This document shows, piece after piece, positions 3,123-59,201 of a stretch of 64,000 bases of DNA. The notes under the pieces were generated by a model. That model saw only the letters and a list, made by a program, of their open reading frames with translations. It was not told the origin of the DNA and made no database searches. This DNA is from Octopus sinensis. Its lineage: Eukaryota. The stretch is from the NCBI RefSeq assembly GCF_006345805.1, contig NC_042997.1:136028001-136092000 (forward strand), in the 5' to 3' direction. Within the stretch, counting starts at the first letter, position 1; each line of letters begins with the position of its first letter. Both the position numbers and the translations under genes were made by a program.

Positions 3123-3169
3123 AATAATAATAATAATAATAATGATGATGATAATTATAATAATGATAC

Positions 3170-3243
<74 letters not shown>
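3123..3243 (+). repeat. (TAA)n microsatellite, tail or target of Dong copy 1
   Basis: About 40 TAA-type units, with a few GAT/ACT variants, directly after the 3'UTR. Confidence 0.95.
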
Positions 3244-3640: not shown

Positions 3641-3871
3641 TATTTCTTTACTGCCTACAAGGGGCTAAACATAGAGGGGACAAACAAGGACAAACAAACG
3701 GATTAAGTTGATTATATCGACCCCAGTGCGTAACTGGTACTTATTTAATCGACCTCGAAAGGATGAAAAGCAAAGTCGACCTCGGCAGATTTTGAACTCA
3801 GAACGTAACGACAGACGAAATACCACTAAGCATTTTGCTCAGCGTGCTAACGTTTCTGCCAGCTCGCCGCC
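3641..3871 (-). mobile_element. tRNA-type SINE family A, variant with a Tx1-like 3' tail
   Basis: The reverse complement starts GGCGGCGAGCTGGCAGAAACGTTAGCAC, has B-box-like GAGTTCAAAAT, and ends TAGCCCCTTGTAGGCAGTAAAGAAATA followed by (TA)/(TTA)n. Confidence 0.8.
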
Positions 3872-3949
3872 TTATAATAGTATTAATGATGATGATAATG
3901 ATGATGATGATGAGGAGGAGGAGGAGGTGGAGGAGCAGCAGCAGCAGCA

Positions 3950-4160
3950 GCTTGCAGAATCGTTAACACGCCGGGTAAAATGCGTAGCCGCATTTCGTCC
4001 GTCCTCACGTTTTGAGTTCTAATCCCACTGATGTCGACTTTGCCTTTCATTCATCCCTTCAGGGTCGATAAAACAAGTACCAGTTGAGTACAGGGGTCAA
4101 TGTAATTAACTGTCCTCCTCCCCTAAATGTCAGGCCTTGTGACTTTAATAGAGAAAGGAT
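3950..4160 (+). mobile_element. SINE family A
   Basis: GCAGAATCGTTAAC...TTTGAGTTCTAATCCC...GTCGACTTTGCCTTTCAT...CAGGCCTTGTG...GAAAGGAT plus an (ATT)n tail. Homologous to the copies at 5259, 20221, 31361 and 31586. Confidence 0.8.
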
Positions 4161-4791
4161 AATTATTATTATTATTATTATCCTCATCATCATCGTCGTT
4201 CGTCATCGTCGTTGTTGTTATTGTTGTCGCTGTTGCCACTCCTGCTGCTGCTGTTGTGGCCGGAAGAACACTGTGTAAAATGATATGATATAATATATAC
4301 TACATGCTATCCTGTGGATTCAGTAGATTGGTTCAAGTGTTGATACACAATTCGCATCTACTTCAAGTATATGATAATGTAAACTTAACGCGATGTACGG
4401 TATGCCATTGCAATGAATATTATAAAAACAAGAAAACTGAATGGATAATAAAAACCTATTGAAAATACCATAATCTGCTAAGTAAAACAATGCACAGCAC
4501 TGCTAAATCACAATGTGAGTGTAGGTGGGGAGGTGTTTGTGTGCGTATACACACATATAGATATACTGAAAATGAGAACAAAAACGAAAAACAAGTCCTT
4601 AACTCCTGGACGCTCGCCATCAAAATAAAGCAAACCAGCACTACCAATTATAATTCAACGTGCACACAAAGCGACAAGTTCTCCCTCATATATATGCACG
4701 AACTAAAATAACTATATGTGTAACTGTATCTATATATATTATTGTGTGAGTATATAAATATGTGTGTATGTGTGAGTAGATACACACACAC

Positions 4792-4826
<35 letters not shown>

Positions 4827-5258
4827 ATGTATGTATATATGTATATATGTATGTACATATGTATATATGTTTGTATATATGTATTATGTATGTATGTATG
4901 TATGTATGTATGTATGTATGTATGTATGTATGTATGTATATTATCCGTGAGGGAATAATTTGTTGTTCAGGAGGACGAAGAGAATCAATGTGAGTAAATA
5001 TGTATATCTTGTTTACCTGTTATAAGTGTTTATATGTATGTGAGTTTGCGTGTGTATGTGCTTTGAACAGGTAATGAATATTAATGAAACGTCTAATGAA
5101 AATTTATAAAACGAATTATATGTGTGCAAAGTATGTGTGTATGTGTACCTATGCGTGTGCGTGAGTGTGCTCATGAGTGTGTGTGTTTTGTTCGTGCCTC
5201 ATTATATTCGAGCCTTGGAAAATATCAACCATAAGATTAATATTTCTAAAGTACCTCA

Positions 5259-5431
5259 GGCGGCGAGCTGGCAGAATCATTAGCACACCGAGCAATATTC
5301 TTCGCAGCATATCGCCAGTCTTCTCGCTCTGAGTTCTAATTCCGCCGATGTTGACTTTGAGTAGATAAAATAAGTAACAGCTGAATACTTAGGTCGATGG
5401 CATCGACTTACTGTGCCAAAATTTAAAAACC
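5259..5431 (+). mobile_element. SINE family A, internally deleted
   Basis: GGCGGCGAGCTGGCAGAATCATTAGCAC head, GAGTTCTAATTCCGCCG, and a shortened body. Confidence 0.75.
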
Positions 5432-15902: not shown

Positions 15903-15908
15903 ATAATA

Positions 15909-15988
<80 letters not shown>

Positions 15989-15994
15989 ATAGTA

Positions 15995-16065
<71 letters not shown>

Positions 16066-16080
16066 AACAATAACAATAAC

Positions 16081-16125
<45 letters not shown>
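15903..16125 (+). repeat. Compound (TAA)/(TAG)/(CAA) microsatellite
   Basis: In-phase blocks TAA, TAG, TAA, CAA, TAA directly after Dong copy 3. Confidence 0.95.
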
Positions 16126-16217
16126 TGGGGAAGATCAATCCCAGTGCCACAGGAATGAGAGATTCAAATTAAATATATTAAATTGAATTTCTTTTAATAA
16201 TCAATTCATATATATCA

Positions 16218-16472
16218 AAATAGTGTTAGAGATAGCAACACCTACAATTTCATCAACTCCAAACGATATTAACTCAACCAAGCCATAAAATATTTAATAT
16301 TATACTTACTTACAACACGTGTTTCATGAGGGTACGTATGGCATTGTTAAGACACAAAGTCTTAACAATGCCATATAAATAGTCAGTATAATATTAAATA
16401 TTTATGGCTTGTTTGAGTTAATATCGTTCGGAGTTGATGAAGTTGGTGCTGTTTCTATCTGTAACACTATTT
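16218..16472. repeat. Foldback (MITE-like) with an inner perfect hairpin
   Basis: Imperfect arms 16218-16310 and 16381-16472. Perfect 17-bp inner stem 16337-16353 / 16359-16375. TA-rich flanks. Confidence 0.85.
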
Positions 16473-16589
16473 ATATATATATATATATAACAGACAGGTG
16501 TGCAGGTGTCCAGTACCGATGCAGCGTAAAGATCTAGAAATCATGGTCTACTGGTCTTGCCAAGCTGGAGAGGAGTGATTCGCTCCTTT

Positions 16590-19356: not shown

Positions 19357-20220
19357 AGCAAAACTGAGTTGTAAATGCTGATACCGAAAACCAAAACGTG
19401 ATACAGAGAGACTGATACTGTTCCACAATTTGAGACCTAAATCAATAGTTTGCATCTGTCTTTTCATGACTAATTTTGCTTGCTGTAATGTGTCGGTTAG
19501 AACCTTACAAAATATTTACAGGATAAATCTTGCCAACGTTGCTACAAGTAGTTTTATTCACCTCATCGGCACTAGGAGAGAACGAGCATTTGAATAGATA
19601 AGGCAGCCATCGAGTATATTTCAAGCCTAAAGTACGAAATGAACTCAACACTTAATGAAACAGTAAAGTTAATGAAATATTCACAAAATTATAGTAGTTT
19701 TTCTCACTACTCACTCTTCTACTAAGAGCATTGCGAGAAACGTATATGACTATAGATTATGTGCTATGTGACTATAGACTATGTGTTATGTGACGAACAT
19801 ATCCCAAAATGCTTTTAGCTCGACCAGCAAGCCATCCACAGTAGAAAAATACGGTGAGAATAATCCCATGACGGTCCAATCATTCACACTCGTTAATCTG
19901 AATTGTCTTTCTGTTATAGTTTAGTTTAACTTATGTGTGGCTAATTTGTATTTATTTGTGATTATTGATACTTAAAATCCGTTTCTTTGTTGTTTTTTTT
20001 TCAATGGTTAGAAATTATAAAATCATGAAACTAACTTTGAGTTTACCAATAAACTTTGTATTTATGTATAACAAGAATACTTGTACTGATAAGTTCAAGC
20101 AACACAAAAGTTTATGTTTGCGAAATGTCATTTGTATGACAATAGGTTGATTATTGAATGTGACCTGTCTAGTCATAGAACAATTGATAAACATTAGTTC
20201 TGATATGAAAAAGAATAAGA

Positions 20221-20431
20221 AGTCGGTGAGATAGTAGAATCGTTAGCAGGCGAGGAAAAATGCTTAGCCTCATTCCGTCCGTCTTTACGTTCTGAGTTCA
20301 AATTCCGCCGAGGTTGACTTTGCCTTTCATTCTTTTCGGAGTCGATGAATTAAGTACCAGTCAAGTGCTGTGGCCGATCTGATTGACTCTCCCCTTCCTC
20401 CTAATTTCAGGCCTTGTGACTATAGAAGAAA
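20221..20431 (+). mobile_element. SINE family A with a 20-bp target-site duplication
   Basis: TGATATGAAAAAGAATAAGA at 20201-20220 and 20432-20451 flanks the SINE body (GTTCTGAGTTCAAATTCCGCCGAGG). Confidence 0.88.
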
Positions 20432-20587
20432 TGATATGAAAAAGAATAAGATTTGTTGGCTGTTTTCTTTCATTAAAATATTCACCTCTACAAATATGGG
20501 TTTAAGAAATGAGACATTTTGTAATCAAAGGCTACACGACATAAATCAAAACATTGATGATGATATTAAACGAGAATATTTTCCACA

Positions 20588-20710
20588 AATTTGAACTCAG
20601 AACGTAAAGACGGACGAAATGAGGCTAAGCATTTTTCCTCGCCTGCTAACGATTCTACAATCTCACCGACTTCTTATTCTTTTTCATATCAGAACTAATG
20701 TTTAGTCAAT
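20588..20710 (-). repeat. Inverted duplication of 20183-20304 (SINE head plus its flank)
   Basis: Near-identical reverse complement that includes the non-SINE flank and the TSD sequence. Confidence 0.88.
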
Positions 20711-21359: not shown

Positions 21360-24300
21360 CTTCTCGAGGACAAACCAACGGAGGAGAAAGCAAAAACTTT
21401 CGAGCAGTAAGTAACCCTCTGTATTCTAATTCATTAGAACTATGATCAAGATTGGTTGTGTAAATGCGCGTGGCTTGGGGTCCCCTTGGAAACAAGGGTA
21501 CCTCTTAAATGACATAAAGTCACATAAGTTAGAAATCATAGCCATAAGCGAGACCAGACTCCACAATCCGCGGGCCCTAAAGACCATGTTTGGCGGACAG
21601 TTCAACATTTATTTTTCCCCCTGTCTGCCGAGAATGGGCGGTAGTGGCACCGCGGTACTTTTTCACAAGAGTCTGGATCTCAATGTAAGGACAATATTCG
21701 TAGACCCGGAGGGTAGACTGGTCGTCCTGGATGTCGACGGCAGCAATGGGTGCGCTTTTCGACTCGTATCAGTTTACGCACCACCCTTAACAGGTCGGGC
21801 GGATTTCTTTCAACGTCTAGAAGTTTTCTTGGGAACGTCTCGTCCTTTACTCTTAGTGGGGGATTGGAATGCTACCTTGGACACGCATGTAGACTACGTG
21901 GGTAGAGATAGGAATAGACGGGGATGCAAATGCCTCAGAGACCTGCTCAGACGCTTTCAACTGTCTGACAGGTTCCGACTAGACCACCCGAATGCGCCAA
22001 CGTGGACATGGAGCAACCGCATCGGGTCGTCGAGATCGTATCTAGATAGGATACTGTGTAGGACAGTAGATAGAGATAGCATAGGATGTCCACAATTCCA
22101 CATAGTCAGCTACACGGATCACAAACTTGTGACATGTACGCTAGACTTAGGTAAGACACTTAGGCAGGGTCCCGGATACTGGAAACTAAACGCGTCTTTC
22201 CCATCGAGACAAGTTTTCAGAGACCGGATTAGCACACTAGTAAAGAGGGCTTTGACGGGAGCCATCATCAACAACAAATGGTGGTTTGCCTTCAAGAGAG
22301 CAGTAAAAGCAGAAGCGATTAGGTACAGCAAAGCACTAGCCATAGATAGAAATAGAGTAGAGGGTGAGCTAGTTAAGAAGCTAGAAGAGGCAATTAGAAG
22401 CGGCATCGCATCCGACGTTTTGGCGGCGAGGTTGGCCCTCGACCAACACTTCAACGCCAAACACGAAGGATGTGCTGTCAGAGCTAGGATGCGTGCTCTA
22501 AGGAACGAAGGTGTTGGAGCCGCGAGAGAGGCCCGGGTGGCAGAGGCGCAACAGGGCAACAAAGCCACCATTCGGTCACTGGTAGATGAACAGGGGCGCG
22601 AATTGCTCGAGCCAAGTAAAATGTGTGAGGCCTTTCAGCAGCATTTTGCCCGACTGTTCGGAACGAGTGGAGGGCAAGAACGTAGGGTGGACTTCAGTGC
22701 CTACCTACATAGCCTACCACGACTCTCGACAAGAAAGGCAGGGTGCTGCGAAGGTGCCTTCACGGCGGCGGAAGTGCGGGAAGCGATGGCAGAATGCTCG
22801 AGGGACAAATCACCGGGTTGGATGGTCTACCCTACGAGCTTTACAATTGTATGCCAGACTTGTTTGGAGATCTCTTGGCGGCGGTGTACAGCAACTGGCA
22901 GCAAAACGGGAGCATTCCTGGTTTTGTGAGCCGAGGAGCCGTAACACTGCTGAAGAAAGATCTAAGCAAGGAAATGTAATAGATAACTTTAGGCCCATCA
23001 CTCTGCTTAATGCAGACTTGAAAATTTTGGCCAAGGTGCTAGCCAAGAGGTTGGCGCTTGTCATCGAGAAACTGGTCGACAAGGCGCAAACATGCGCCGT
23101 GCCAGGCCGGACCATCCATGACAACCTCCATCTGATGCGCTACATCATAGACAGGGTAGTTAACGAACCTGGCATGGGTGGGGCCCTGATCAACTTGGAT
23201 CAATCGAAAGCCTTTGATAGGGTAGACCATCGATACTTGGAGGCAGTCCTGAGAGCGGCTGGTTTCGGTCCCGTCTTCCGCGGCTGGATAGCTGCCTTGT
23301 ACAGAGGCATCCGTTCGGTAATTCGCGTAAATGGACATCTATCGAGACCTTTCGACATTGCACGTTCGGTCCGTCAGGGATGCCCCCTCTCGGCGCTTCT
23401 ATACGTATTGACTCTTGAGCCACTACTGCGGAAGCTGGCGACTCTAAGGGGCATCCCGCGAGAATTGGGATGCGGGACGAGCGTGTCTGCATACGCGGAC
23501 GACGTCACCGTCATAGTGTCTAGCCACGAGCACATCGAGCTGGTCGGCGAGACACTGAAAAACTACGAAGCGGTGACAGGAGCGAAAATCAACCGGGAAA
23601 AGTCAGTGGGCTTGCGACTAGGGACCTGGAGAAGCAAGCCCATGCCGTCCACCAGCGCCTCCGTCGTGGGACGCTGGACCGACGGCCCGGTTGAGTTGCT
23701 CGGGATCTGGTTTGGTCCGGACCTCCAAGTGGAGAAGAACTGGAACGAGATAACGAGTAGGGTGGTCACTCTCGCCCGGCAATGGGCCGAGAGGAAACTG
23801 TCCCTAAAAGGTCGAGCGGAGGTGGCGAACACGTACATCGCGTCCGTCATCTACTACCGCCTGACCGTCGTACCTTGTCCCGACCCTACCATCACCAAAC
23901 TACAACGCATCCTCTTTCGCTTCTTGTGGAAAGGATGCGTCCCGATGGTCAGGCGATCCATTTGCTGTCAACACCCGTTAAAAGGAGGGCTGGGCATGCC
24001 GTGGTTGATGATGCGCAGACACGCGCTGAGACTGCGACATCTCTGGCTCTATGTAGACGACGGTGAACAGGTGTGGTCGCCGTTTGTGAGGCACGCTTTC
24101 CCGCAGCTCGTTTCCATGACCGAACTGCAGTCGTGGATCAAAAAGAGGCCGAGGAAGGGCGAGTGTCGCGTTGCTCTCAAGCAACTCTGCCGTCCTGGGT
24201 CGACCTTAAGTGACTTCAACACAACCAAAGCATTCTATAGGGGTTTAGTGGAGGGGAGGTACGACGACGAGCTCGGGGCGAACCTGGACGTCGACGAGGA

Positions 24301-25250
24301 GTACCTGACCCGCCTGTTCGGGACGACTTTCGGACCAGGGCCCATGGACAACTTCCAGAGATCCCTGGCCTGGCAGTGCTACCGAGAAGCGCTACCCGTT
24401 CGGGATAAGCTCTACAGACACGGCTCGAGAAACACGGGGCCGACCTGCCCGAGATGCGGTCAGAGCGACGAAACCGTTCTGCACGCACTCGTTCAGTGTC
24501 CAACAATTTCCGACCTGTGGGCTTATGTCGAACAACTGCTGTCACGTGTGGGACGAGTCGGTTTATCAGCTGAGTCTATCGTCAATATTGTCACGCCTCC
24601 TTCCTTCAAACGGGAAGGAAGAGCTATTTTCATCATCCTTGTGGCTATGGCGAAAGAATGTATCTGGTGGACGCGTCTGAAAGGATTGGAGACAAACACT
24701 TTCCTCTCTGGTCAATCTCTCATCAACTTCTTCAAGTACCACTTGAAAAGGAAAGTGAGAGTAGAGAGGCAAGTTTTGTCTAGCGAATGTTTTAAAAAAA
24801 GATGGGTGAATGTAACAAGAATGGCACGTATGAATGACGAAGCCACCTTGAGCATAGTCCTATGAACCCAGAAATCGAAAACAGAGAGTTGCTTATTTGC
24901 AAAAAAAAAAAAAAAAAAAAAGAAATATAAAATGTGACTTCATTGACCGAGGTTACCGTGGTCTTTTCCGTAGGCTTTTCTTTCCACGGGTAAACCTCAC
25001 CTGTCCTCCCCTTTACACTTCATATTGACATTTCTGTGATAACGATCCCTATTGATCAATTTTTTTTCCTCTCCCCCTTTTTTTTTTTTTTAACCCCCCC
25101 TTTTTTTTGTCCTCTTTCTCTCCTTTTACGATCCCTTTTGATCGAAACTCCCCCTTCCTTTTTTTTTTTTTTTAAAACCTTCAAAAGAAAAGCTCTACCT
25201 TGTAATTTGTTCTATCTGTGTGCAGCCCTGTGTGGCTAATAAAGAAACAT
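21360..25250 (+). mobile_element. Tx1/L1-clade LINE, 5'-truncated within the end of ORF1
   Basis: GC-rich island with an APE-RT ORF2. A putative ORF1 tail (LEDKPTEEKAKTFEQ*) ends at 21410. The 3'UTR has A and T tracts and ends GCCCTGTGTGGCTAATAAAGAAACATAT before AT/AC repeats. Confidence 0.92.
21442..24865 (+). pseudogene. LINE ORF2 (AP endonuclease, RT, zinc finger) with two frameshifts
   Basis: APE motifs NARGL, ISETRL, GDWN, YLDRIL and TDHKLV. RT motifs RPITLLN, DQSKAFDRV, QGCPLS and YADD. Zinc finger CPRC..ETVLHALVQC. The frame changes near 22815 (PGLDGLPYE is in ORF 22743-22979) and near 22970. Confidence 0.92.
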
Positions 25251-27656: not shown

Positions 27657-27818
27657 TTATAATTTAGGGTATCTAAGCGATACCACCACTCTTCAAATAG
27701 CAGCCAAAACTTGACTCTAAAACCACATTAAAAGTATGAACTTTTAATGTTGTTTTAGAGTCAAGTTTTGGCTGCTATTTTAAGCGTGGTGGTATCGCTT
27801 AGATACCCTAAATTATAA
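27657..27818. repeat. Long hairpin, 79-bp arms with 3 mismatches and a 4-nt loop
   Basis: 27657-27735 compared with the reverse complement of 27740-27818. The loop is ATGA. Confidence 0.92.
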
Positions 27819-27828
27819 TCTCTCTCTT

Positions 27829-27931
<103 letters not shown>

Positions 27932-27947
27932 TACATATATATATATA

Positions 27948-29239
27948 CGAGGGACGTTCAATAAGTAATGCCCCTGACCCACTTGCATTTGTTTGACCTA
28001 GCTGAAAGTTTGCATGTGCAATTATGTATATCTCTATAGATTAAGTGGCAAATTACAGCTCTGAACTAATTGTGTTTTCTGATTTACAGGTGTTTGAACT
28101 GAGTCAAGTGTGAAATGGAGCCTGTTGAGTGTCGAGCAGTGATCCGGTTTTTGTATTTGAAAGGACGCACACCACGGGAGACTTTTGATGAAATGAAAGT
28201 AACTTATGGTGATGATGCCCCATCATATGACCTTGTAAAACGCTGGCATCGTGAATTCAAACATGGTCGGAACTCTGTGGAAACAGCTCCCAGATCTGGT
28301 CGCCCCCCATCTGGCATTGATGAGGCATCTGTCCGTCAAGTTGAGGCTGCCATTTTGGAAGATCGACGCATAACTATTCGCCAAATAGTCCATCAGGTCA
28401 AGACTAGTACCGTATCTGTGGAAACTATCATTCATGACCATTTGCATATGCAAAAAGTGTCTGCCAGATGGATTCCCAGGTTGCTCACACCTTTCCAAAA
28501 GCAAGAACGCGTCGAGTCCTCGAGGATGAATGTGGAGATGTGCCAAGAAGATGAGGCAAAATTTTTCAAAAGACTGATTACACAGGTGGAAACCTGGGTC
28601 CATCACTATGATCCAGAGACCAAAGCCCAGTCAATGCAGTGGAAGCACCGTGACTCACCTCCTCCAAAGCAGGCAAGGGTGCAGCCCTCCGCTGGCAAGG
28701 TCATGCTCACAGTCTTCTGGGATCAGAACGGAGTAGTGATGACAGATTTCCTGGCAAAGGGTACCACAATTACTGGAGCCTATTATGCTTCACTTCGAGG
28801 AAATTAAGAGAGGTTATCAAAATCAAGAGGCGGGGCAAGATCAGCAAAGGCATCCTCCTCCTGCAGGACAACGCTCCGGCCCACAACTCGCTTGTCGCCA
28901 GATCAGAAGCACAGGCGTGTGGCTATGAAATCCTCCCCCATTCCCCCTAATCTCCTGACCTTGCACCCTCTGATTTTCACCTCTTCCCAGCCATTAAGTT
29001 GTTTTTGAAAGGGAAGCGTTTCCCAGATGATGCAGCCTTGATTTCTGAAGTCACGTCGTGGTTGGAGGACCAAGCTGGGGTCTTCTACAAAAACGGTCTC
29101 CAGAGCTGCATCAAACAATGGGAGAAATGTGTAACTCTGGGTGCTTCCTACGTAGAAAAAGACTAATAAGCTTGCCAAGTTTTGTTGCTTTACTGCTATG
29201 GAAAGTGGGTCAGGGGCATTACTTATTGAACGCCCCTTG
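27948..29239 (+). mobile_element. Full-length mariner (D,D34D) DNA transposon, non-autonomous
   Basis: 37-bp TIRs at 27948-27984 and 29203-29239 (2 mismatches), TA on both sides, length 1292 bp, inserted in (TA)n. Confidence 0.95.
28115..29166 (+). pseudogene. Mariner transposase pseudogene (possibly irritans-like)
   Basis: HTH region, RSGRP and WIPRLL. The first catalytic Asp is changed (TQVETW). Frameshift near 28795. QDNA-x-SPDLAPSD shows D34D spacing, and the HPPYSPDL motif reads HSP*SPDL. Confidence 0.92.
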
Positions 29240-29305
29240 TATGTATATATGTATATATATGTACGTATTAGAATATATATAATACTTATATTTATACATG
29301 TTTAT

Positions 29306-29351
29306 ATAGATAGATAGACAGATAGACATGCAAGCAGACAGATAGACCAAC

Positions 29352-29403
<52 letters not shown>

Positions 29404-29630: not shown

Positions 29631-31360
29631 TAATACGTGCATGCATACATAACTGTCTCGCCTTCCGCGAGTGTGTGCGCGATTGTTTTAGATATCAACT
29701 GACTTGACAAACTTGATGTTGGCATATACAATCTGCATGAAATAAAATTTAATATAATTGTATAGACGATTACGCACCCAGATTACAGAAATTTAATGGC
29801 TGCTTGTCTTTTAAATTAATCTTATAATTGATGCACAACCAACTCTTTTGAAAATGTGAATAAGGTTACTAAAATTAGCAACGTTTTTACTTCAGTCATT
29901 TGAAATGCCTTTTAGTTACGCTGTCAATTACACATAGCAATGAACATCTTAATTCATTATTCATTAACTTTGTATTGTTTCATAAACAATAACACAAATA
30001 TGATAATAAAATTTGATTAATAAACGACAATTCAATCGTAAATGAAAATATTCGGTGAAGGTTATACATTTTCATACTTGATTATGTCTGTATTCAATGC
30101 ACTGCACATCGTTGAACTGTATATTCTTTTCCTCTCACCTAACGTATTTCAAATGTCTGTGCTTTTCCGAAAATATTGGTTCTACATTAGTATACTCATT
30201 CCGACTACCACCACTTCTTTTATCCAGTGACTAAACCTTGAACAAATCACTTTATTGAATTCTTCGTCAACAAAACTGGCATTTCTTCCGGTTCCTCCTC
30301 CGCTGTATCTCTCTATTATACATTCAGACACTGACCTTCAAGATTTCATTGTGATGATTAACTGTATTAGTATTATTCAACTTATGTAAATGTTTCTGCA
30401 ATCGCTAGGAGGACAGGTTTTCCTGTAAAAGCTTAATTACAAAAGAAATCTAGATTCCTTTTTTTATTATCACTTTCATTGTACACAGAATTTTATCTGA
30501 GAAGCAATTGAAAACAGCAGTCATCTCACGATCGGATTATACTTCATAAAAACAAAACGTTGCAGTCATTAAAATACGCTTTTCTTTTTTCATAAGTGAT
30601 ATTTTTTTTTAACACTGTAAAACGTCAATTATTCATACTGTAGATGTATTCAAATACAATTAATATTAATGGAGTTACATGACTTAATAGACGAGAAAAC
30701 TGTTTTTGAACTCTTTTATGTTGATACGCCACTTAGATATTGCCGAAGCTGACCGATACAGTATAGTAGCGAACTGCGTGTTATAGATTTTAATATTATT
30801 TCATTAACAGTGAAGAAATAAACATTGTTATTTTGTGGTTGAACCATCGTATAATGGTAGTATCACGGAATATCAGCTAAGTTTCGATGTGTGGTTACGT
30901 ATTTTATATATTTTATCTGAAATCATGCCTAAATCTACCATATTGTATCACTCTGATTTTGATAAAGCAGAAGTCATTAATGTATTGGATACATTCCATT
31001 GATGATAATCTTCCACAATATATGTGTGGCGTTGAGGTAATGTAAATTTTTATCACATGGGGTTCAGAATTGACTATATAGATATCTTTCAGTTATTGCT
31101 CTTTCGAAGCTATAAACTTATAAAACCTTACATCTTTTCAATTTCTGTCTCTGGAATGGTGACTAACAAATATCTTATGCTTGTTTGAAAAAGCTAATAT
31201 ATTCTAACATTTCCATTTAAGAATCAAACTTCGATTTCTACTTTGGTTTCCTAAGCCAGCCAATTTTAAGTTTTAGATGTTGCCATACAATATATTTGAC
31301 AATTAGCTGAGATCATTATACATCTTATCTTCAATACTTTCTTCTTATAAGACAGATAGT

Positions 31361-31560
31361 AGGCAGAAGTGTTAGCACGCAAGCCAATATGCTTAGCAGC
31401 ATTTCGACCGTCTTTACGTTCTGAGTTCAAATTCCGCCGAGGTCAGCTTTGACTTTCATCCCTCCGAGGTCGATAAAATAATTACTAGTTTGGTACTGGA
31501 GTCGATGTAATCGACTTACACTCTCCTCCGAAATTACTGGCCTGGTACCAAAATTTGAAA
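31361..31560 (+). mobile_element. SINE family A
   Basis: CGTCTTTACGTTCTGAGTTCAAATTCCGCCGAGG core and tail GGCCTGGTACCAAAATTTGAAA. Confidence 0.8.
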
Positions 31561-31585
31561 TCAATATTTAAGGATTGTAAGTCAG

Positions 31586-31795
31586 TGAGCCGCCAGAATC
31601 ATTAACATGCCGAACAGAATGCTTAGTGACACTTCATCCGTCTTTACGTTCTGAGTTCAAACTCCCTCGAGGTCGACTTTGCCTTTCATGATTTCAGTCG
31701 TGATAAAGAAATATATCAGTTGAATACTGGGACCGCTGTAATCGACTGAACTCTTCTCCTGAAATTGCTGGCCTTGTGCCAAATTTTGAAACCTA
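31586..31795 (+). mobile_element. SINE family A (tandem with the previous copy)
   Basis: Same core, with tail GGCCTTGTGCCAAATTTTGAAACC. Confidence 0.8.
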
Positions 31796-34348: not shown

Positions 34349-34463
34349 GAAAGGAAGAAATGGAGAGTTAATGTAGTTTTAAATAATTCATTTGTATGAT
34401 ATAATAACGTGGAAAGTTTTTTTAAAGCAATACTAATAAAATATAACTTATAAAGCTCTAATC

Positions 34464-34950
34464 GAAATAGCAGATGCCAAAATCCAAGATACGTGTTTCG
34501 AATCATGCCCATAGGTGATTAGTAATTCTAAGCATTTGAGTAGGGCCTAATGCTAAGAATTGGTCATCATTTTCAACTATATGGAGGTGGGGTGAAAAAT
34601 CTCATCAGGGCTGTATGAGCTTATACTACAATGGTTAGCATATTTCTTGAAAGGATGCAGACGAATTACTAATAAGTTTATGAAGTTAAAACATATGTAT
34701 ATATGTTAGAATATAATATATATGCTCTAACGTCTTAAACTTATTAGTAATTCGTCAGCATCTTTTCTAGAAATATATTAACCATTGTAATATAAGCTCA
34801 TAAATCCCTGAGGAGATTCTGCTCCATATAGATGAACATGACTTACCAATTTTTAGCATAATACTCTACTCAAATGCTTAGAATTAGTAATCTCCCAGAG
34901 GCATGAATCGAAACATAAATGTAGGTTTTTTTGGCATCTGCCATTTCTTT
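34464..34950. repeat. Imperfect foldback / MITE-like element, ~215-bp arms
   Basis: Arms of about 34464-34680 and 34736-34950 are reverse complements, with GAAAT(A/G)GCAGATGCCAAAA at both ends. Confidence 0.85.
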
Positions 34951-35189
34951 TAGAATTTTATATTTTATAAAATATTTGTATTGTTTTTATAAAAAAAAAC
35001 TTTCAATCTCATACAAATGAATTATTCTCCATTTTCTTCCTTTCATTATTAACAATATGTATTTCTATAATAATCTCTAACATATCGCCGAGACTTTCTC
35101 CTTATATGATAGTGATTAACTAGTGGAACTTCTGGATTATTTAATCCCTAATGACGACCTCTTTGAGCTCGTCCGAAATCACTAACTTA

Positions 35190-35417: not shown

Positions 35418-35937
35418 TGCATTTAAACAAGATGATCAACATTTTTTATATTATTGAATGTTATGAATATTGAAATCATATTTGATATTATTGAATTATG
35501 CAAACATTGAATTTTTGAAACATGTTTTTCTACTATGTAATTTTAAATTTTTACCATTGATGAACAAAAAGTATCGTTGAATCAAGTTTGGCATGTATGT
35601 AAATAAATTTATTTAAAAACCTTTTCCTGCGTGGAAATACACCCCCTCTATTCTTATATATTTAAGAATAGAGGGGGTGTATTTCCACGCAGAAAAAGTT
35701 TTAGTAGAATTTGTTGCTGAAAATGCACCTGAATTGTTTTTAAATAAATTTATTTACATATATGCCTAACTTGATTCAACGATACTTTTTGTTTACCAAT
35801 GGTACAAATTTAAAACTACATAGTAGAAAAACATGTTTAAAAGATTCAATGATGGCATAATTCAATAATATCAAATATGATTTCAATATTCATTATATTC
35901 AATAATAAAAAATGTGGATCATCTTGTTGAAAATGCA
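35418..35937. repeat. Foldback with ~200-bp arms and a perfect 30-bp terminal stem
   Basis: Outer arms 35418-35620 and 35736-35937. Perfect stem 35627-35656 / 35663-35692. One-sided bulge of about 35 nt. Confidence 0.9.
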
Positions 35938-50891: not shown

Positions 50892-52492
50892 TGTGTGGTG
50901 TGTGTGTGTGTGTGTGTGTGTGCTATGTGTGTTATATAAACCACAATTCTTGTTAAATTATTATAACTTTATCTTTACTCTCTTAGCTGACCGAGTGTAT
51001 TCCTACTTCCTACTTGTTGAAGCATTACCACATAATATATATATATATACTCATTACAGATATAGGGTGAAAGATAATTAACTTAATAAAATCAACAAAT
51101 TTCACCTAGTAGTATTTCGGTATGGAAAAGGACCATATTCGGTAAAAACTTATATAATTATAACAATAAGGGTTTGCAACAAGTTGCATGACCACATACC
51201 GAAAGTTTTTAATATATTTTTAATATTTAAAATGATTCTGAATTTAACTGTTGAATAGATATTGAATCATACTAATTGTGACGCATGGCTACTGAAACTC
51301 TTATATTCATCACGAAAATTGTGAATATAACGTCTCACCAAAGGGAACATTTTCAATATCAAATGGAATTATCGTTGCACTCACATTCAGATATACGGGA
51401 AAACAACAAGTAGCATATGAAACAGGAATGTACAGAACATGAAGTGAGAATGACGGCAGTTGTATAAACTTAATGATGCAATGGAAACCGCTCAAACAAA
51501 CACGATGTTATGTCAAACAGAAAAGTAAATAAAAGGACAAACTGCATGAATTAATAAGAAATAGCTGTCGAGAAATATGAGAAACGCTTATATCTTATAG
51601 TGGTCAGACCAACAATGTTGATGATGATGATGATGATGATGTATAAGAGGAGGAGAAGCAGAAAGATGGGGTTAGATATGAATATAGTGATGAGGAGGAC
51701 GAGTGAGAATGAAAATGATGATTTTCATCGCTGCTACAAGAGTAATTACTATCGTTATCATCATCATCGCCATCTCCATCATCAGCATTATTATCTCCAC
51801 TGTATTATGTCGCAAGTAAGATTTAATTTACAAATCTGAATAGAATATCTTCTTGAAGAAAATCAGGGCATTTCAGATAATATCTATTGTTCATTGTTGT
51901 TGAGGTTTATTTTGGAGAGGGGTGAGTCGTTAGAATTTATCAAATCACCATCTTTGTAAGAGCTGATTAAAGTTCATTAAAATTTACTACTTTTGTTTTT
52001 TTGTCAACCAATGTTATCAAAAAAGGTCTGTCGGATGTGTTTGGATACTTTATCAATTAACCTATCTTTTTATATCCGTTGTATGCAGCATCTGGTTGAT
52101 AACATCACATAAATTATTCTGATTTGATATATGGCCTGCAAAAGTCAGCCGTATGATAAACTAGTTTCAGTTAAATGCACATTAAAAAATTTTTTTATGG
52201 TTCACTAAGAGAACGTTCTCTAGCAATATTCAGGAAATAGTACCGACTTTCAATATTTTCTCCGACCCGCTAATGATTCATAATCACAAAGGTATATTGC
52301 TTTTATAACAATGCAAATATGAAATTTTGGCTTTAGTGGTTTTCATTGCCATCCGGTTTCTCAGCTCTGCTACATCACATCTCTTTGCTCTTCACCTCAC
52401 TGTTTTTGTCTTTTTTATTTCTTGTTATTATTTTAGGACACTCCATAAAACGTTCAGTCACCTTTCGTGATTTTATTCTTTAAAAGTGATCG

Positions 52493-52591
52493 TATTACAA
52501 CTGGAAATTTCATTCGGCAAATCGACTCCATTAAGCATTCTTGAGCAGATCACAAACACAACAATAGTTTTACGTATGTGCGCACACGCAT

Positions 52592-52642
<51 letters not shown>

Positions 52643-52766
52643 TTTGTGTGTGTGTGTGTGTGTGTGCATGCGTGTGCGCACATACGTAAAACTATTGTTG
52701 TGTTTGTGATCTGCTCAAGAATGCTTAATGGAGTCGATTTGCCGAATGAAATTTCCAGTTGTAATA
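52493..52766. repeat. Palindrome A: identical 100-bp arms around (CA)24-AATT-(TG)11
   Basis: 52493-52592 is the exact reverse complement of 52667-52766. The ORF track shows the same peptide on both strands. Confidence 0.97.
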
Positions 52767-53228
52767 GTTTAGTCCTGTCAATTTTGAAACACTTAACAAT
52801 TACATTATGATATAACTCCATGTGCAGCCTTGTCCTACGGTGCTAGCATAAAGCCTGAGCATTTCAGTAAATGTGCCACCACTCAATAAACTCATTTTTT
52901 TGTATTTCACATAAGTAACTTTCAATGTGTATGTTACATTTGTTACGTATGATACATACACACAGATAAACACACACACACACACCACACACACACACAA
53001 ATTGTGTGTGTGTGTGTGTGTGTGTTTATCTGTGTGTATGTATCATACGTAACAAATGTAACATACACATTGAAAGTTACTTATGTGAAATACAAAAAGA
53101 TGAGTTTATTGAGTGGTGGCACATTTACTGAAATGCTCAGGCTTTATGCTAGCACCGTAGGACAAGGCTGCACATGGAGTTATATCATAATGTAATTGTT
53201 AAGTGTTTCAAAATTGACAGGACTAAAC
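52767..53228. repeat. Palindrome B: 204-bp arms (1 mismatch) around (CA)n-AAT-(TG)n
   Basis: 52767-52970 compared with the reverse complement of 53025-53228. It directly abuts palindrome A. Confidence 0.97.
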
Positions 53229-54894
53229 TTAAAGCCTAGATTGAATGGATTCTGCCAGACTTCTTATCTATAATTACGCTAATTTGAGACATAGTCTTTA
53301 ATGAGATTCATTTTAATCTTAAGCATTAGGCATTCAAATATTTTAAATTCCTCGCTAAAAGAAGTGACTTTTGCATAAGATATCTACTAAAATTAGATTT
53401 GTTTTCATTTATTTTTATGTATAACCTTTCAGCTATTCAGTGCAAGTGTTAAGCTCTGGGCGGAACGAATCCGCCCTTCCATTTCGTTCAGGTTGCACAT
53501 ATATACTTCAGTTTGTCTTTCAGTATGACTGAATATTACCTTACTACATCCATCTGTACTCAGTCTTGCTCAAGTTCATTTTAAGTCTCTTTTTCTGAGA
53601 AATAGTGCTGAAATATGTACTATGGTTGATTCACTTGACTTTGTCCCATTACTAATAAGTTTGATAACAGCAAATAAATCTCCATTTTCAACACCTTCAA
53701 GTGAGATATAATTCTTTTATGCATTATTCTTAATGTTTTTTTTTGTTTTGTTGTTGTTGTTTTGTTTTTTTTGTTTTGGTGGGGGGGTTGCAATATGTGT
53801 GAATCTGCGTCATTAAAATACTGATATTTATTGATCAAGGTGAGTAATGGGATAGAAAAATTCACCCAATGCAGGATTTGAACTCAAGTCCTATAAGATT
53901 GAGAATAAATACTACAAGGTAATTGAGTTCGTGTCACCTCCCAGTTCTACCATTCGCCACCCTCTTCTAAGTTTCGTAATTGATGAAATGTTCGTAATCT
54001 TAGATTAGTTGAAGGAACTTCTCAAGTTTTCTTGCATATCCGGTAATTAGGTTTATTAAATTCTCACATTACTTTCTGATGAGTATCATCAATAAACTTT
54101 TCAAGTGAATGCAACGAATTAAATGGAAGTTTCGATGATAACAGTTGTCGAAGGTCAATGTTCTTCTACCTTAGGCTAAAAGATATTCAAAAGATGAGTC
54201 AAATATTATATTATCCCTGATCACTAAACCTTTTGTGATTTCATACATTTTCCATCTGAGCAATTCATAAAGCAATTACGTAATAAAATTAATTACAAAA
54301 CTAATTTTGCAAAGTAATCCCATCAAAATTTCTAACATTTTATATTTCTTGTAGTGGTAAAAAATTTTTTAAATAAAGGACAATTCTTTAGAGTGTCGTT
54401 TACACTTTAACTGTGATTTGACAGATTAATGATCCATGTAGCAACCATAATGTAAATTAGTTTTAGCTATTATTTCTATAAGACCTCCGTTAACACTGCC
54501 TAACGTAGAAATCCATAATTACGTTCATTGGTAAATTAATTGATAATGAAAAAGACCAATATAATACTTTTTAAAAATACGTATTCAAAGACACCTTTTT
54601 GTGAAATACTTTGAATATTTTAGTAATTATATAAAGGAGATTTCAAAATTTCTCAGATAAAGACATGATTTTGTGTTACAGGTACAAGGTTTTAGATTTA
54701 TAACTGACAGGTAAAATTATGAAGCACACATGTTTGTGTTGTTTAGTCATAATTTGGTCCTACTCTAGAAGCCGCATTATCAAAAAGCGTTTAAACCATA
54801 AGCCTCCCTTCTTTGCGTTTCCAAAAATAATTCAACATCGAAGTACATTATCTAGTATGTACTTTTTTAAGAGTGTTGGGTGTAGTTTGATGTA

Positions 54895-56103: not shown

Positions 56104-57711
56104 TGCAAATGTTTCAATCATTTGGCTCGCCTTTGTAGAATTCTTGTAATTTTAATGACGTTAGCGAATTTAAATTGGTACAAATAAGAATGAAAACTGA
56201 GCGTAAACATTATTCGTCAGAATGAAATCTGTAAAATTTATATGATGAAGTTATTTAAGTTATATAAACTGTATGGTTTTTAAAAAAATCTGTATATTTA
56301 ATAAGTACTGTACAGGCTTGAATTTGTACCAAACGGGATCGAACTTGCATGTATTGAATTATTTATCTTCATTTAAAACCCTCCAACTCACCAAGTTCAT
56401 CGAAGAAGAACCTCATGAATACCTCTTTTAGTATACAAGCTTCATTCTTTAACAGATCTTGTTAGTCCTAAACTTACCACGTTTGCCGTGGACACGCAAA
56501 AGCTTTAATACTGTCACGCTGTAACTACGTTCAAAATATATAAATCTGTCCACCTAACAGCTACGATAATACATAGGTTTAGTTCGAATTCAGTTTTGGT
56601 CCCCTTTACTCAAGTAGCTGCCATAATTAAATAATTATCAGAACTCATTATCTAAGCACTCTACATGTAAAAGCCCGTGGTATTTTCATTTGAGAATTTT
56701 CTTGAAATTTGATCTATACTCTAACCTTAAAAAAGGCCTTGTCACCTTTATACAATTACATTTTTCTTAACTCACAAAATATGGAAATCCCACTGACCTA
56801 AGAAGCAGTACTTCATTAAGGTTTGTTTCATAAGTTTACAGTAGATTATACAAGAAATCGAGAGATATCTGCTCTAATATTCTATCTCAGACCAGGTTGC
56901 TCAAATCAAAATATAAATTCTTGTAACTATCTCAAACTATCAATCAATCTATAATAGTATCACACATGCAAGTCTGTGTGAAATATAAAAATCAATCAGA
57001 TACATCCACCAATATTGTATGAGATCTATTGACCTCATAATAGTGCTTCCCATCTTATATTCATGGATAGAATTTCGACTCAGTAATGCAAATAAAAAGT
57101 AAAACATTCATCAATTTATTTGTCACTACTCTTCTATGGTAGGTATTTCAGTTTAGGCATAAGTGTCTGTATTATTCAAATAAACTTTACTAATATCGTG
57201 ATTGGAAGTGTTAACCTTTTGAATTCTAGGTCGCTAGATATTTTATGTCCTTGTGGAGTCAAACAGTAAGATTTAAATTTCAGTTATCAATCATTGTAAA
57301 CAGTTGAATTTTTTTTATTGACAAGAATACACAGTATGTATGTGTTTGTATATGTGTGTGCATGTATGTGTCTGCGTCTCTGTGTGTGTGTACGAATAAA
57401 CTAACAGTACAATTGTTATATATCAACACACTGTAAATAAGTTGGTATCGTTTAACAATAGAAGAAAACGTTTACATATTACATTTTTTAGATTCCGAAG
57501 AACAAATATAAAACCGGATAACATAGAAATCTTCCTATATTTTTGTCATAGTCCGGCTAAAGTTTCTGGTTTATTTTCATTGAATGCAATGTGATATTTC
57601 TAAATTACAGGAACGTTTTTTTTTTAACATTATCTAGCCGTGATTGTTGAACTCTTGATTTTTTTTTATCTTCATCGCTTATCTAATATTGTGCTAAGAT
57701 GGGAAGTAAAA

Positions 57712-57857
57712 GAAGAAGAAGAAGAAGAAGAAGAAGAAGAAGAAGAAGAAGAAGAAGAAGAAGAAGAAGAAGAAGAAGAAGAAGAAGAAGAAGAAGAAGA
57801 AGAAGAAGAAGAAGAAGAAGAAGAAGAAGAAGAAGAAGAAGAAGAAGAAGAAGAAGA
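57712..57857 (+). repeat. Pure (GAA)n microsatellite, about 48 units
   Basis: Direct reading. Confidence 0.97.
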
Positions 57858-58758: not shown

Positions 58759-59201
58759 ATAAACACAGACACTATATATTCGTTCGTCACTCGTTTATTA
58801 CTCTTCTTATTCTAACTCATGTCCATTATCTGGAAATCTTTCAACACATATCTGTGACCTCCTCAGTGACATTTTCCGTCTTCGTGTGTACTCTTGCTCT
58901 GCTTATTCCATTCACGTCAAGAAATCCGCAAGTGGGCTGCTTAAACTCATACGGCGCACAAAAAATAGGGACTCGGTGTGCTTTCCTACGGACAAGTCCG
59001 GCAGAATGTCGACACATAGCCAGCTGAACTACACCCAGGCCGAAGAGAATGGCACAAGCAGAGCAAGAGCACACACGATGACGGAATGTGTCGGTGTGGG
59101 TGTTATAGATGTGTGACGAAAGATTTCCAGACAATGGACATGAGTTAGAATAAGAACAGTAATAAACGAATAAAGTAAGAATATATAGTGCGTGTGTTTA
59201 T
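58759..59201. repeat. Inverted repeat with ~145-bp arms enclosing a PLE-like coding remnant
   Basis: Imperfect arms 58759-58904 and 59056-59201. The spacer encodes GLLKLIRRTKNRDSVCFPTDKSGRM, similar to the TDKSG motif upstream of PLE RTs. Confidence 0.75.

What the first reader, a model, noticed from the sequence alone, without database searches (positions are those of the whole stretch)
52493..53228. Two abutting near-perfect palindromes with the geometry of an inverted re-integrated ~370-bp circle
Seen: the layout is x-C-x'-y-C-y'. x is 100 bp with identical arms, y is 204 bp with one mismatch, and both centres C are the self-complementary (CA)n-AAT(T)-(TG)n. The x'/y junction at 52766 has only about 1 bp of microhomology. 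Inference: if the ancestral locus was x-C-y', circularising it joins the end of y' to the start of x. One crossover at the palindromic C in inverted orientation then gives exactly this layout. The unit of about 360-380 bp is in the microDNA size range. Serial fold-back template switching would give the same result. This would be a route to cruciform or hairpin-RNA loci driven by (CA)n/(TG)n junctions.
Basis: partly seen in the sequence, partly recalled or inferred. Interest (0 to 1): 0.75.

Follow-up and report, generated by a model that had tools for sequence, protein, structure and literature searches.

The report
Twin fold-back palindromes at CA/GT repeat
A 737-bp stretch of non-coding cephalopod DNA consists of two back-to-back, almost perfect hairpin-forming palindromes; they most likely arose recently when DNA synthesis switched strands at a CA/GT repeat, which is a known kind of mutation seen here in an unusually clean form.

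Summary
Positions 52493-53229 parse exactly as x-(CA)24-AATT-(TG)11-x'-y-(AC)8(CA)7-AATT-(GT)11-y'. The x arms (100 nt) are identical. The y arms (204 nt) differ at one base. x' and y share only one base (A, 52766).

Three single-base details at the two centres were informative:
- centre 1 reads AAATTT;
- centre 2 reads AAATT;
- a 'CC' phase break lies at 52985|52986.

With repeat lengths free, these details match fold-back priming at the self-complementary AATT, followed by a return into the (CA)n tract, with zero edits. A reciprocal crossover with an inverted circle needs two edits. A hairpin-capped break also needs two.

x and y are single-copy in the window and have no target-site duplication, so nothing here supports a transposon. 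The window is octopod-like, repeat-rich DNA. I found no orthologous or allelic sequence, so the empty allele, read support and genome-wide copy number remain untested.

Verdict: probably a genuine, young, in-situ template-switch rearrangement. This is a known class of mutation in an uncommon geometry. Interest is moderate to low.

The parts
52093..52492 (+). Left flank L. Unique in the window and not part of either palindrome.
   Evidence: blastn against the window finds only itself. No direct repeat is shared with the right flank.
52493..52592 (+). x: the unique left arm of palindrome P1 (100 nt). Inferred to be ancestral.
   Evidence: Identical to the reverse complement of 52667-52766. No other copy in the window.
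52593..52640 (+). (CA)24 tract on the left side of centre 1.
   Evidence: Tandem Repeats Finder reports 24 perfect copies. Regex parse.
52641..52644 (.). AATT, the exact symmetry centre of P1. Proposed junction J1, where synthesis folded back by pairing on this self-complementary tetranucleotide.
   Evidence: Parse. The centre reads AAATTT, the perfectly symmetric form expected if an ancestral AAATT was copied back from the AATT.
52645..52666 (+). (TG)11, the inverted copy of part of the (CA) tract. It is 13 units shorter than its partner.
52667..52766 (+). x': the inverted copy of x. Inferred to be newly synthesised.
   Evidence: xp == rc(x) is True.
52766..52766 (.). Junction J2: the single A shared by the end of x' and the start of y (1 nt of microhomology).
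   Evidence: Both inverted repeats include 52766. Junction strings are printed.
52767..52969 (+). y: the inverted copy of y'. Inferred to be newly synthesised.
   Evidence: 203 of 204 positions complementary to 53026-53229, counting the shared A at 52766. The mismatch is at 52896.
52970..52985 (+). (AC)8, the inverted copy of part of the (GT)11 tract. It ends at junction J3.
   Evidence: Regex parse.
52985..52986 (.). Junction J3: a 'CC' phase break between (AC)8 and (CA)7. Proposed point where synthesis returned to the original template.
   Evidence: The observed sequence fits (AC)8(CA)7 with 0 edits. Any in-phase tract costs 1 edit.
52986..53025 (+). (CA)7-AATT-(GT)11: centre 2. Inferred to be the ancestral quasi-palindromic microsatellite junction, reading AAATT.
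   Evidence: The (CA)7 is in the same phase as the x-side tract. The modelled ancestral centre folds as a 23-bp hairpin at -39 kcal/mol.
53026..53229 (+). y': the unique right arm of P2 (204 nt). Inferred to be ancestral and contiguous with the right flank.
53230..53630 (+). Right flank R. Unique in the window.
   Evidence: No target-site duplication with L.

Best explanation
This is a genuine, evolutionarily young, in-situ rearrangement of non-coding DNA in a cephalopod genome.

**Inferred ancestor.** The locus was L-x-(CA)N-AATT-(GT)11-y'-R, about 378 bp between the flanks. Its (CA)n/(GT)n strand-switch junction is a hairpin-prone quasi-palindrome.

**Inferred events, during replication or repair synthesis.**
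1. The growing strand copied x-(CA)N-AATT.
2. It paired through the self-complementary AATT with the opposite-sense template and copied backwards. This produced (TG)n-x' and turned AAATT into the perfectly symmetric AAATTT (J1).
3. After about 122 nt it left that template. With 1 nt of microhomology it re-primed about 380 bp away at the y'/R boundary (J2). It then copied y and (AC)8 back towards the centre.
4. It returned to the original template inside the (CA) tract, 7 units upstream of AATT. This left a one-base phase break, CC (J3), and it then continued through y' into R.

An equivalent two-step route gives the same product. First comes a tandem duplication of the unit, which creates the y'|x joint. 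Then a single strand-switch, or an inversion, occurs between the two palindromic centres.

**Product.** The result is an inverted, circularly permuted duplicate of the unit. It reads as two abutting palindromes that can form 122-bp and 220-bp hairpins or cruciforms.

**Shown:** the layout, the arm identities, the junction sequences and the exact parse. **Inferred:** the ancestor, the order of switches and the polymerase or fork context.
For: - The exact layout and arm identities are confirmed.
- The whole 737 bp matches x (CA)a AATT (TG)b x' y (AC)c (CA)d AATT (GT)e y' with 0 edits. This is the literal output of a fold-back at AATT plus a return that ignores repeat phase. The hairpin-cap model and both versions of the reciprocal-crossover model each need 2 single-base edits.
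- The only CA-to-TG switch points in 64 kb sit at the two centres. At least seven plain CA/TG tracts elsewhere in the window are not rearranged. This ties the event to the quasi-palindrome.
- The modelled ancestral centre forms a 23-bp hairpin.
- x, y and both flanks are single-copy in the window, and there is no target-site duplication.
- Arm identities of 100% and 99.5% indicate a recent origin.
- The mechanism class is established. Template-switch mutations create perfect inverted repeats in one step (PMC5453318, PMC8794818). Leading/lagging strand switching at short inverted repeats gives inverted junctions (PMC4689423, PMC10766183). Iterative switches build complex inverted structures (PMC11293582).
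Against: - No ancestral or allelic sequence was obtained, so the ancestor is assumed.
- The discrimination between models rests on two single-base markers next to microsatellites. One of them is a homopolymer-length difference, which a sequencing or consensus error, or a later mutation, could produce.
- The (TG)11 copy is 13 units shorter than its (CA)24 template, so slippage must be invoked under this model, as under all the others.
- The middle jump has only 1 nt of microhomology and lands exactly at the unit's far end. A circle or a tandem-duplication intermediate explains that landing point more naturally than a free jump does.
- Read support for the assembly is unknown.
Confidence: 0.5

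Rival explanations
1. Hairpin-capped double-strand break. The quasi-palindromic centre extrudes as a cruciform or hairpin and is cut. Both broken ends keep a copy of the centre as a fold-back primer and are extended along themselves, by 100 nt on one side and 204 nt on the other. The two extended ends are then joined by end joining at x'|y. This resembles very long P-nucleotide tracts or snap-back synthesis.
For: - It gives the same layout without any coincidence, because x and y are simply the extents of fold-back synthesis.
- The 1-nt microhomology at 52766 is typical of end joining.
- Palindrome centre-breaks and hairpin-capped ends are well documented (PMC3855049, PMC8053094).
- Fold-back templated inverted insertions at breaks are known (PMC11724301, PMC5728401, PMC4912351).
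Against: - With the same ancestor it predicts AAATT at centre 1 and an in-phase tract at centre 2. That is two single-base discrepancies.
- Documented snap-back insertions are mostly about 5-34 bp (PMC11724301 abstract), not 120-220 bp.
Confidence: 0.15
2. The ~378-bp unit x-C-y' was copied out as a microDNA-sized circle. The circle then re-integrated at its own locus by one crossover within the palindromic centre, in inverted orientation.
For: - The geometry fits exactly: the reverse complement of x'|y is the circle junction.
- The unit size of 378 bp lies in the microDNA range; microDNAs are eccDNAs under 1000 bp (PMC12847890).
- The 1-nt microhomology is compatible with circle closure by end joining.
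Against: - A reciprocal crossover puts both junctions at one homologous site. Whether placed in AATT or in the CA tract, the prediction differs from the observed centres by 2 single-base edits.
- The (CA)7-AATT segment is duplicated at both centres, which a simple crossover does not do.
- No circle data are available.
- As far as I know, germline re-integration of microDNA has little direct support. The reviews returned discuss re-integration mainly for large cancer ecDNA.
Confidence: 0.1
3. An assembly or library artefact. An in-vitro strand-switch chimera, from whole-genome amplification or long-read library preparation, or a consensus error, was carried into the contig.
For: - Fold-back and palindromic chimeras are a known artefact of ONT and PacBio reads and of amplified DNA (PMC12870357, PMC6218980).
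- Near-perfect arm identity is what an artefact would show.
- Reads could not be inspected.
Against: - The described artefacts are read-length palindromes with the breakpoint near the middle of the read (PMC12870357). Here two small palindromes (274 and 464 bp) are embedded in a contig that continues for more than 10 kb of unique sequence on both sides and resumes the original strand.
- The arms differ by a substitution and by repeat lengths. That fits in-vivo history better than a single chimeric molecule does.
- Assemblers use several reads per position.
Confidence: 0.12
4. Mobile DNA. Either P1 and P2 are two adjacent palindromic MITE or foldback elements, or the whole 737 bp is an ectopic insertion of a linearised inverted-dimer circle or hairpin-capped 'dog-bone'. 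In the second case the native sequence (TG)n-x'y-(CA)n lies elsewhere in the genome.
For: - The window holds several other 160-590-bp palindromes. One of them, 35422-35932, has a clear 5-bp target-site duplication, ATGCA. Palindromic elements therefore exist in this genome.
- Any inverted-dimer circle cut at a random point gives exactly this layout (my inference).
- P1 begins and ends with TA.
Against: - There is no target-site duplication around P1+P2 or around P2. The TA ends of P1 follow automatically from the palindrome's own symmetry.
- x and y have no other copy in the 64 kb and no exact match in JGI metagenomes. Those metagenomes do contain cephalopod-like LINE DNA.
- Two unrelated elements sharing the same rare (CA)n-AATT-(GT)n centre and landing side by side is very unlikely.
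- By my own derivation (not scripted), the dimer model also needs 2 single-base edits at centre 2.
Confidence: 0.08

Closest known systems
Template-switch mutations (four-point model; Loytynoja & Goldman 2017, PMC5453318; Monttinen & Loytynoja 2022, PMC8794818)
   Same: Replication briefly copies the complementary or nascent strand. This creates a perfect reverse-complement repeat, and hence a hairpin stem, in a single event. The switches occur at short self-complementary sequences.
   Different: Described events copy one contiguous nearby segment and are usually tens of bases long. Here about 340 nt are copied in two segments that wrap around the unit (x' then y). This needs three switches or a tandem-duplication intermediate, and it yields two abutting palindromes.
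[quoted passage not shown]
   Same: The first step is the same kind of error: the leading strand switches to the lagging side at a short inverted repeat, giving a palindromic junction. In my reading, the 737 bp equals one turn around a hairpin-capped 'dog-bone' or inverted dimer.
   Different: ODIRA gives interstitial inverted triplications of kilobases or more, through an extrachromosomal intermediate that contains an origin. Here there are two copies, not three. The unit is 0.38 kb. The two junctions use the same centre.
DUP-TRP/INV-DUP and iterative template switching, MMBIR/FoSTeS (PMC11293582)
   Same: Several consecutive template switches occur. One is mediated by inverted repeats and another by microhomology, and the product contains an inverted segment.
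   Different: The human events span kilobases to megabases and use large inverted low-copy repeats. The copy-number pattern also differs: there is no triplicated segment here.
Fold-back / snap-back templated insertions at double-strand breaks: SD-MMEJ and Pol theta (PMC11724301, PMC5728401, PMC4912351)
   Same: A 3' end folds back on itself, is extended to give an inverted duplication of the flank, and is then joined with minimal microhomology.
   Different: Reported tracts are mostly about 5-34 bp. Here they are 122 and 220 bp, on both sides, and centre 1 has the wrong single-base signature for simple snap-back.
Palindromic MITEs / foldback transposons
   Same: Whole-element hairpins of 150-600 bp in AT-rich non-coding DNA. 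Examples with a target-site duplication occur in the same window (35422-35932).
   Different: There is no target-site duplication, no second copy in the window, and two unrelated arm sequences share one microsatellite centre.
microDNA / small eccDNA (PMC12847890; reviews PMC8414719, PMC9527254)
   Same: A unit of about 378 bp, and a junction with 1 nt of microhomology that equals a circle junction.
   Different: No circle has been observed. The centres do not carry the signature of a reciprocal crossover.

Membership tests
Template-switch mutation (four-point model) | The new sequence is the reverse complement of sequence lying within a short distance at the same locus. | tested here: met
   x' = rc(x) exactly. 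y = rc(y') at 203 of 204 positions. Both sources lie within 740 bp.
Template-switch mutation (four-point model) | One contiguous source segment is copied between switch points 2 and 3. | tested here: not met
   The inverted insert is x' followed by y. This is not contiguous in the inferred ancestor x-C-y' because it wraps around the unit. It needs a third switch or a tandem-duplication intermediate.
Template-switch mutation (four-point model) | The ancestral state is established from an outgroup or a sister allele. | not testable with these tools
   No orthologous or allelic DNA was found.
ODIRA | Palindromic junctions centred on pre-existing short inverted repeats. | tested here: met
   Both centres lie on AATT inside a (CA)n/(GT)n quasi-palindrome. 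The modelled ancestral centre forms a hairpin.
ODIRA | An interstitial inverted triplication: three copies with the middle one inverted. | tested here: not met
   x and y are each present exactly twice.
ODIRA | The amplified segment contains a replication origin. | not testable with these tools
   There is no origin map for this genome, and a 378-bp unit is unlikely to carry an origin.
MITE / foldback transposon | A target-site duplication flanks the element. | tested here: not met
   There is no direct repeat of 2 bp or more at the ends of P1 or of P1+P2. For P2 there is only an offset TAA. The control palindrome 35422-35932 shows ATGCA on both sides.
MITE / foldback transposon | Multiple dispersed copies in the genome. 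| tested here: inconclusive
   There is no other copy in the 64-kb window and there are no exact matches in JGI metagenomes. The genome itself was not searchable.
eccDNA (microDNA) re-integration | The unit is in the microDNA size range, and a junction equal to a circle junction is present. | tested here: met
   The unit is 378-379 bp. rc(x'|y) equals y'-end joined to x-start.
eccDNA (microDNA) re-integration | Integration by a single reciprocal crossover, so both recombinant junctions lie at the same homologous position. | tested here: not met
   The best-fitting reciprocal models differ from the observed centres by 2 single-base edits. The staggered fold-back/return model fits with 0. This depends on the assumed ancestor.
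eccDNA (microDNA) re-integration | The circle is physically detectable. | not testable with these tools
   No Circle-seq or read data were available.
Long-read fold-back artefact | A read-scale palindrome: one half of a read maps to the opposite strand at the same place, with the breakpoint near the middle of the read. | tested here: not met
   The palindromes are 274 and 464 bp. The sequence returns to the original strand and continues for more than 10 kb on each side. The artefact is described in PMC12870357.
Long-read fold-back artefact | The structure lacks support from independent reads. | not testable with these tools
   No reads were available.
Hairpin-capped break / long P-nucleotide joint | Two palindromes, each made from one flank, abut at the repair joint. 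| tested here: met
   The layout is x-C-x'|y-C-y' with a 1-nt joint.
Hairpin-capped break / long P-nucleotide joint | Each centre is the direct fold-back of its own end, with the predicted centre sequences. | tested here: not met
   The model predicts AAATT at centre 1 and an in-phase tract at centre 2. The observed sequence has AAATTT and a CC break, giving 2 edits.

The most novel reading that the evidence does not exclude
The locus may be the youngest product of a systematic palindrome-birth process in cephalopod genomes. In this reading, strand-switch junctions in dinucleotide repeats repeatedly seed template switching. That would turn ordinary unique DNA into hairpins hundreds of base pairs long, giving potential cruciform sites and, if transcribed, long dsRNA for siRNA or A-to-I editing pathways.

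The same 64-kb window holds at least five other palindromes that are single-copy within the window. They are 160-590 bp long with 75-94% arm identity, and most lack a recognisable target-site duplication. They could be older products of the same process rather than transposons.
Probability: 0.1. Interest if true: 0.65.

Novelty: new member of a known kind. Interest (0 to 1): 0.35.

Why it matters
If the structure is real, the locus is a very clean natural record of a multi-step strand-switching error. All three junctions are preserved at single-base resolution, and almost no later mutation has accumulated. It shows how a hairpin-prone (CA)n/(GT)n junction can turn about 380 bp of ordinary DNA into two perfect hairpins of 100-220 bp in one or two steps.

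This bears on how long inverted repeats, cruciform-prone fragile sites and hairpin-RNA loci arise. It also offers a concrete case for telling replication-based origins from circle-based origins.

It does not reveal a new class of element, and no function is indicated.

Tried and rejected
**Searches for independent contigs or copies (all negative)**
- I looked for independent contigs through exact ORF products of the locus: 52570-52821(-), which spans the x'|y joint, and 53620-53865(-). Neither is on record.
- I searched the 5.8-billion-protein collection with a composite of all stop-to-stop translations of x'y and both flanks, hoping for ORF-called contigs from other assemblies or runs. 4765 word candidates were scored and none reached E <= 0.001.
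- Exact-match scans of JGI metagenome contigs for a 24-mer of x and a 22-mer of y each returned 0.

**Other checks that led nowhere**
- Rfam at gathering thresholds over the whole window gave no RNA family.
- I tested whether x and y are homologous near the centres, which would point to an older, nested palindrome. They share TTACGTATG at similar offsets, but 22.6% of shuffles reach that local-alignment score, so I dropped the idea.
- I looked for host-gene exons near the locus to anchor an ortholog search. The ORF survey shows only LINE, mariner and low-complexity translations.

**Explanations rejected**
- A simple fold-back read artefact: the scale and the return to the original strand do not fit.
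- Two independent MITEs: there is no target-site duplication, and both share the same rare centre.
- Chance.

Full report
**1. What is there**

Reading 52200-53500 and running repeat detection confirm two abutting palindromes.

- P1 spans 52493-52766. Its arms are 122 nt and 100% complementary.
- P2 spans 52766-53229. Its arms are 220 nt.
- Global self-alignment and direct comparison show that the 100-nt unique arm x is identical to its partner.
- The 204-nt arm y differs from its partner at one position: T at 52896 faces G at 53099.
- The two palindromes overlap by the single A at 52766.
- The reverse complement of the x'|y joint equals the end of y' joined to the start of x.
- As single-stranded DNA the region folds into two uninterrupted hairpins at -431 kcal/mol, against -100 +/- 6.5 for shuffles (z = -51).

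**2. Context**

The window is 36% G+C and dense in microsatellites. It carries LINE-type reverse-transcriptase and endonuclease ORFs and a mariner transposase remnant. No Rfam family was found.

The best named relatives of the LINE ORF at 22586-24865 come from Argonauta hians (64% identity) and Acanthosepion pharaonis. The DNA is therefore cephalopod, probably octopod.

I found no host-gene exon near the locus. x, y and 400 bp of each flank have no other copy in the 64 kb.

**3. Fine structure of the centres**

A regular-expression parse shows that the whole 737 bp is exactly x (CA)24 AATT (TG)11 x' y (AC)8 (CA)7 AATT (GT)11 y'. Three single-base features follow, and dinucleotide slippage cannot create any of them.

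- Centre 1 reads AAATTT and is perfectly symmetric.
- Centre 2 reads AAATT, one T fewer.
- The left tract of centre 2 changes phase at a CC, at 52985|52986. Its inner (CA)7 is in the phase of the x-side tract, and its outer (AC)8 mirrors the y'-side (GT) tract.

In every in-situ model the right half of P2 is contiguous with y' and R, so it must be ancestral. The most economical ancestor is therefore L-x-(CA)N-AATT-(GT)11-y'-R, about 378 bp. These two centres are the only CA-to-TG strand switches in the window, although at least seven other CA/TG tracts are present. The modelled ancestral junction folds as a 23-bp hairpin.

**4. Testing the mechanisms against that structure**

I left the repeat lengths free and used the ancestor above. 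I then generated the centre sequences each model predicts and measured the edit distance to the observed centres.

| Model | Edits, centre 1 | Edits, centre 2 |
|---|---|---|
| Fold-back primed on AATT, then return into the (CA) tract ignoring phase | 0 | 0 |
| Hairpin-capped or cruciform break, each end keeping the centre as a cap | 1 | 1 |

In the fold-back model, the backward copying yields (TG)n-x' and automatically converts AAATT to AAATTT.

In this reading J1 is the AATT at 52641-52644, J2 is the 1-nt joint at 52766, and J3 is the CC. The (CA)7-AATT segment is duplicated at both centres, as expected when the return lands upstream of the departure point.

A two-step route gives the identical product. 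It consists of a tandem duplication of the unit followed by one strand switch, or an inversion, between the two palindromic centres. It also explains naturally why the middle joint equals a head-to-tail junction.

All models need extra slippage to explain (TG)11 opposite (CA)24.

The margin between models is two single-base markers beside repeats, and one of them is a homopolymer length. I treat it as suggestive, not decisive.

I also note, as inference only, that the two back-copied stretches (122 and 220 nt) are of Okazaki-fragment size. That would fit a leading strand that temporarily copied the lagging-strand template.

**5. Other explanations**

*Transposon.* There is no target-site duplication around P1+P2 or around P2. 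The TA ends of P1 follow from its own symmetry. By contrast the palindrome at 35422-35932 has a clean 5-bp duplication, ATGCA. Two unrelated elements sharing the same rare centre and landing side by side is implausible. Genome-wide copy number could not be tested.

*Ectopic insertion of a linearised inverted-dimer circle or 'dog-bone'.* Any such circle cut at a random point gives this layout, so this cannot be excluded. It predicts an empty site with L joined to R, and a donor locus elsewhere.

*Artefact.* Known long-read fold-back artefacts are read-scale palindromes (PMC12870357). Amplification chimeras are corrected at read level (PMC6218980). The structure here is small, returns to the original strand, sits inside long unique sequence, and has arms that differ by a substitution and by repeat lengths. 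An artefact is therefore less likely, but it remains untested without reads.

**6. Attempts to obtain independent sequence**

All attempts failed. Exact ORF products of the locus are not on record. A composite six-frame query of the locus found no related called protein. Diagnostic 22-24-mers of x and y are absent from JGI metagenome contigs. The empty allele, population frequency and read support therefore remain open.

**7. Comparison with known systems**

The event works like a template-switch mutation, which creates perfect inverted repeats in one step (PMC5453318, PMC8794818). It differs in scale, and because the copied material is non-contiguous it fails the 'single contiguous source' criterion.

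It shares its first step with ODIRA (PMC4689423, PMC10766183). It is a duplication, not a triplication, and it is only 0.38 kb.

It resembles iterative template switching at genomic-disorder loci (PMC11293582) in miniature. It also resembles fold-back templated insertions at breaks (PMC11724301, PMC5728401, PMC4912351), but its tracts are several-fold longer.

I therefore file it as a new example of a known class, complex strand-switch inverted duplication, with an uncommon 'inverted circular permutation' geometry.

**8. Verdict**

The preferred circle mechanism is disfavoured but not excluded.
- The best explanation is in-situ fold-back template switching at a quasi-palindromic (CA)n/(GT)n junction, with confidence about 0.5.
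- Interest is moderate to low (0.35). It would rise if a genome-wide survey showed that such junctions systematically seed palindromes in cephalopod genomes. The window's several other palindromes that are single-copy within it hint at this.

Noticed in passing
window 35422-35932: A 511-bp palindromic element. Its outer arms are 93% identical and it contains a nested perfect inner palindrome at 35617-35702. It is flanked by a clean 5-bp direct repeat, ATGCA, and so looks like a MITE-type insertion.
   Followed up: partly
window 34412-35004; 58759-59201; 16208-16482; 27657-27818: Four more palindromes of 160-590 bp, each single-copy within the window, with 75-94% arm identity and no obvious target-site duplication. 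They could be old transposons or older products of the kind of event studied here. Palindromes are unusually dense in this window, about one per 10 kb.
   Followed up: partly
window 20188-20704 (related copies at 3716-4161, 5258-5359, 31354-31778): Two copies of a SINE-like repeat lie in inverted orientation, with 117-nt arms at 98% identity and a 283-bp spacer. The same family recurs elsewhere in the window at 72-85% identity.
   Followed up: partly
window 21442-24865: A LINE with an endonuclease ORF (495 aa) and an overlapping reverse-transcriptase/zf-RVT ORF (759 aa). It is 51-54% G+C in a 36% G+C background and its reading frames are long and open, so it may be a young or active copy. The two ORFs overlap in different frames over 22586-22929.
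   Followed up: partly
protein P0005: A protein 63% identical to the C-terminal half of this cephalopod LINE ORF is deposited as coming from a Herbaspirillum sp. metagenome-assembled genome. This is probably animal DNA mis-binned into a bacterial MAG.
   Followed up: no
window 57710-57857; 15903-16125; 3123-3243: Very long trinucleotide arrays: a perfect (AAG)49, an (ATA)75 and an (AAT)40. The perfect AAG/CTT tract could form a triplex.
   Followed up: no
window 28115-28807: A mariner-type transposase remnant (HTH_48 plus a partial DDE domain). It lies between inverted repeats at 27821-27984 and 29203-29366 that are 73% identical and consist largely of (TC)n/(TA)n and (ATAG)n arrays.
   Followed up: no
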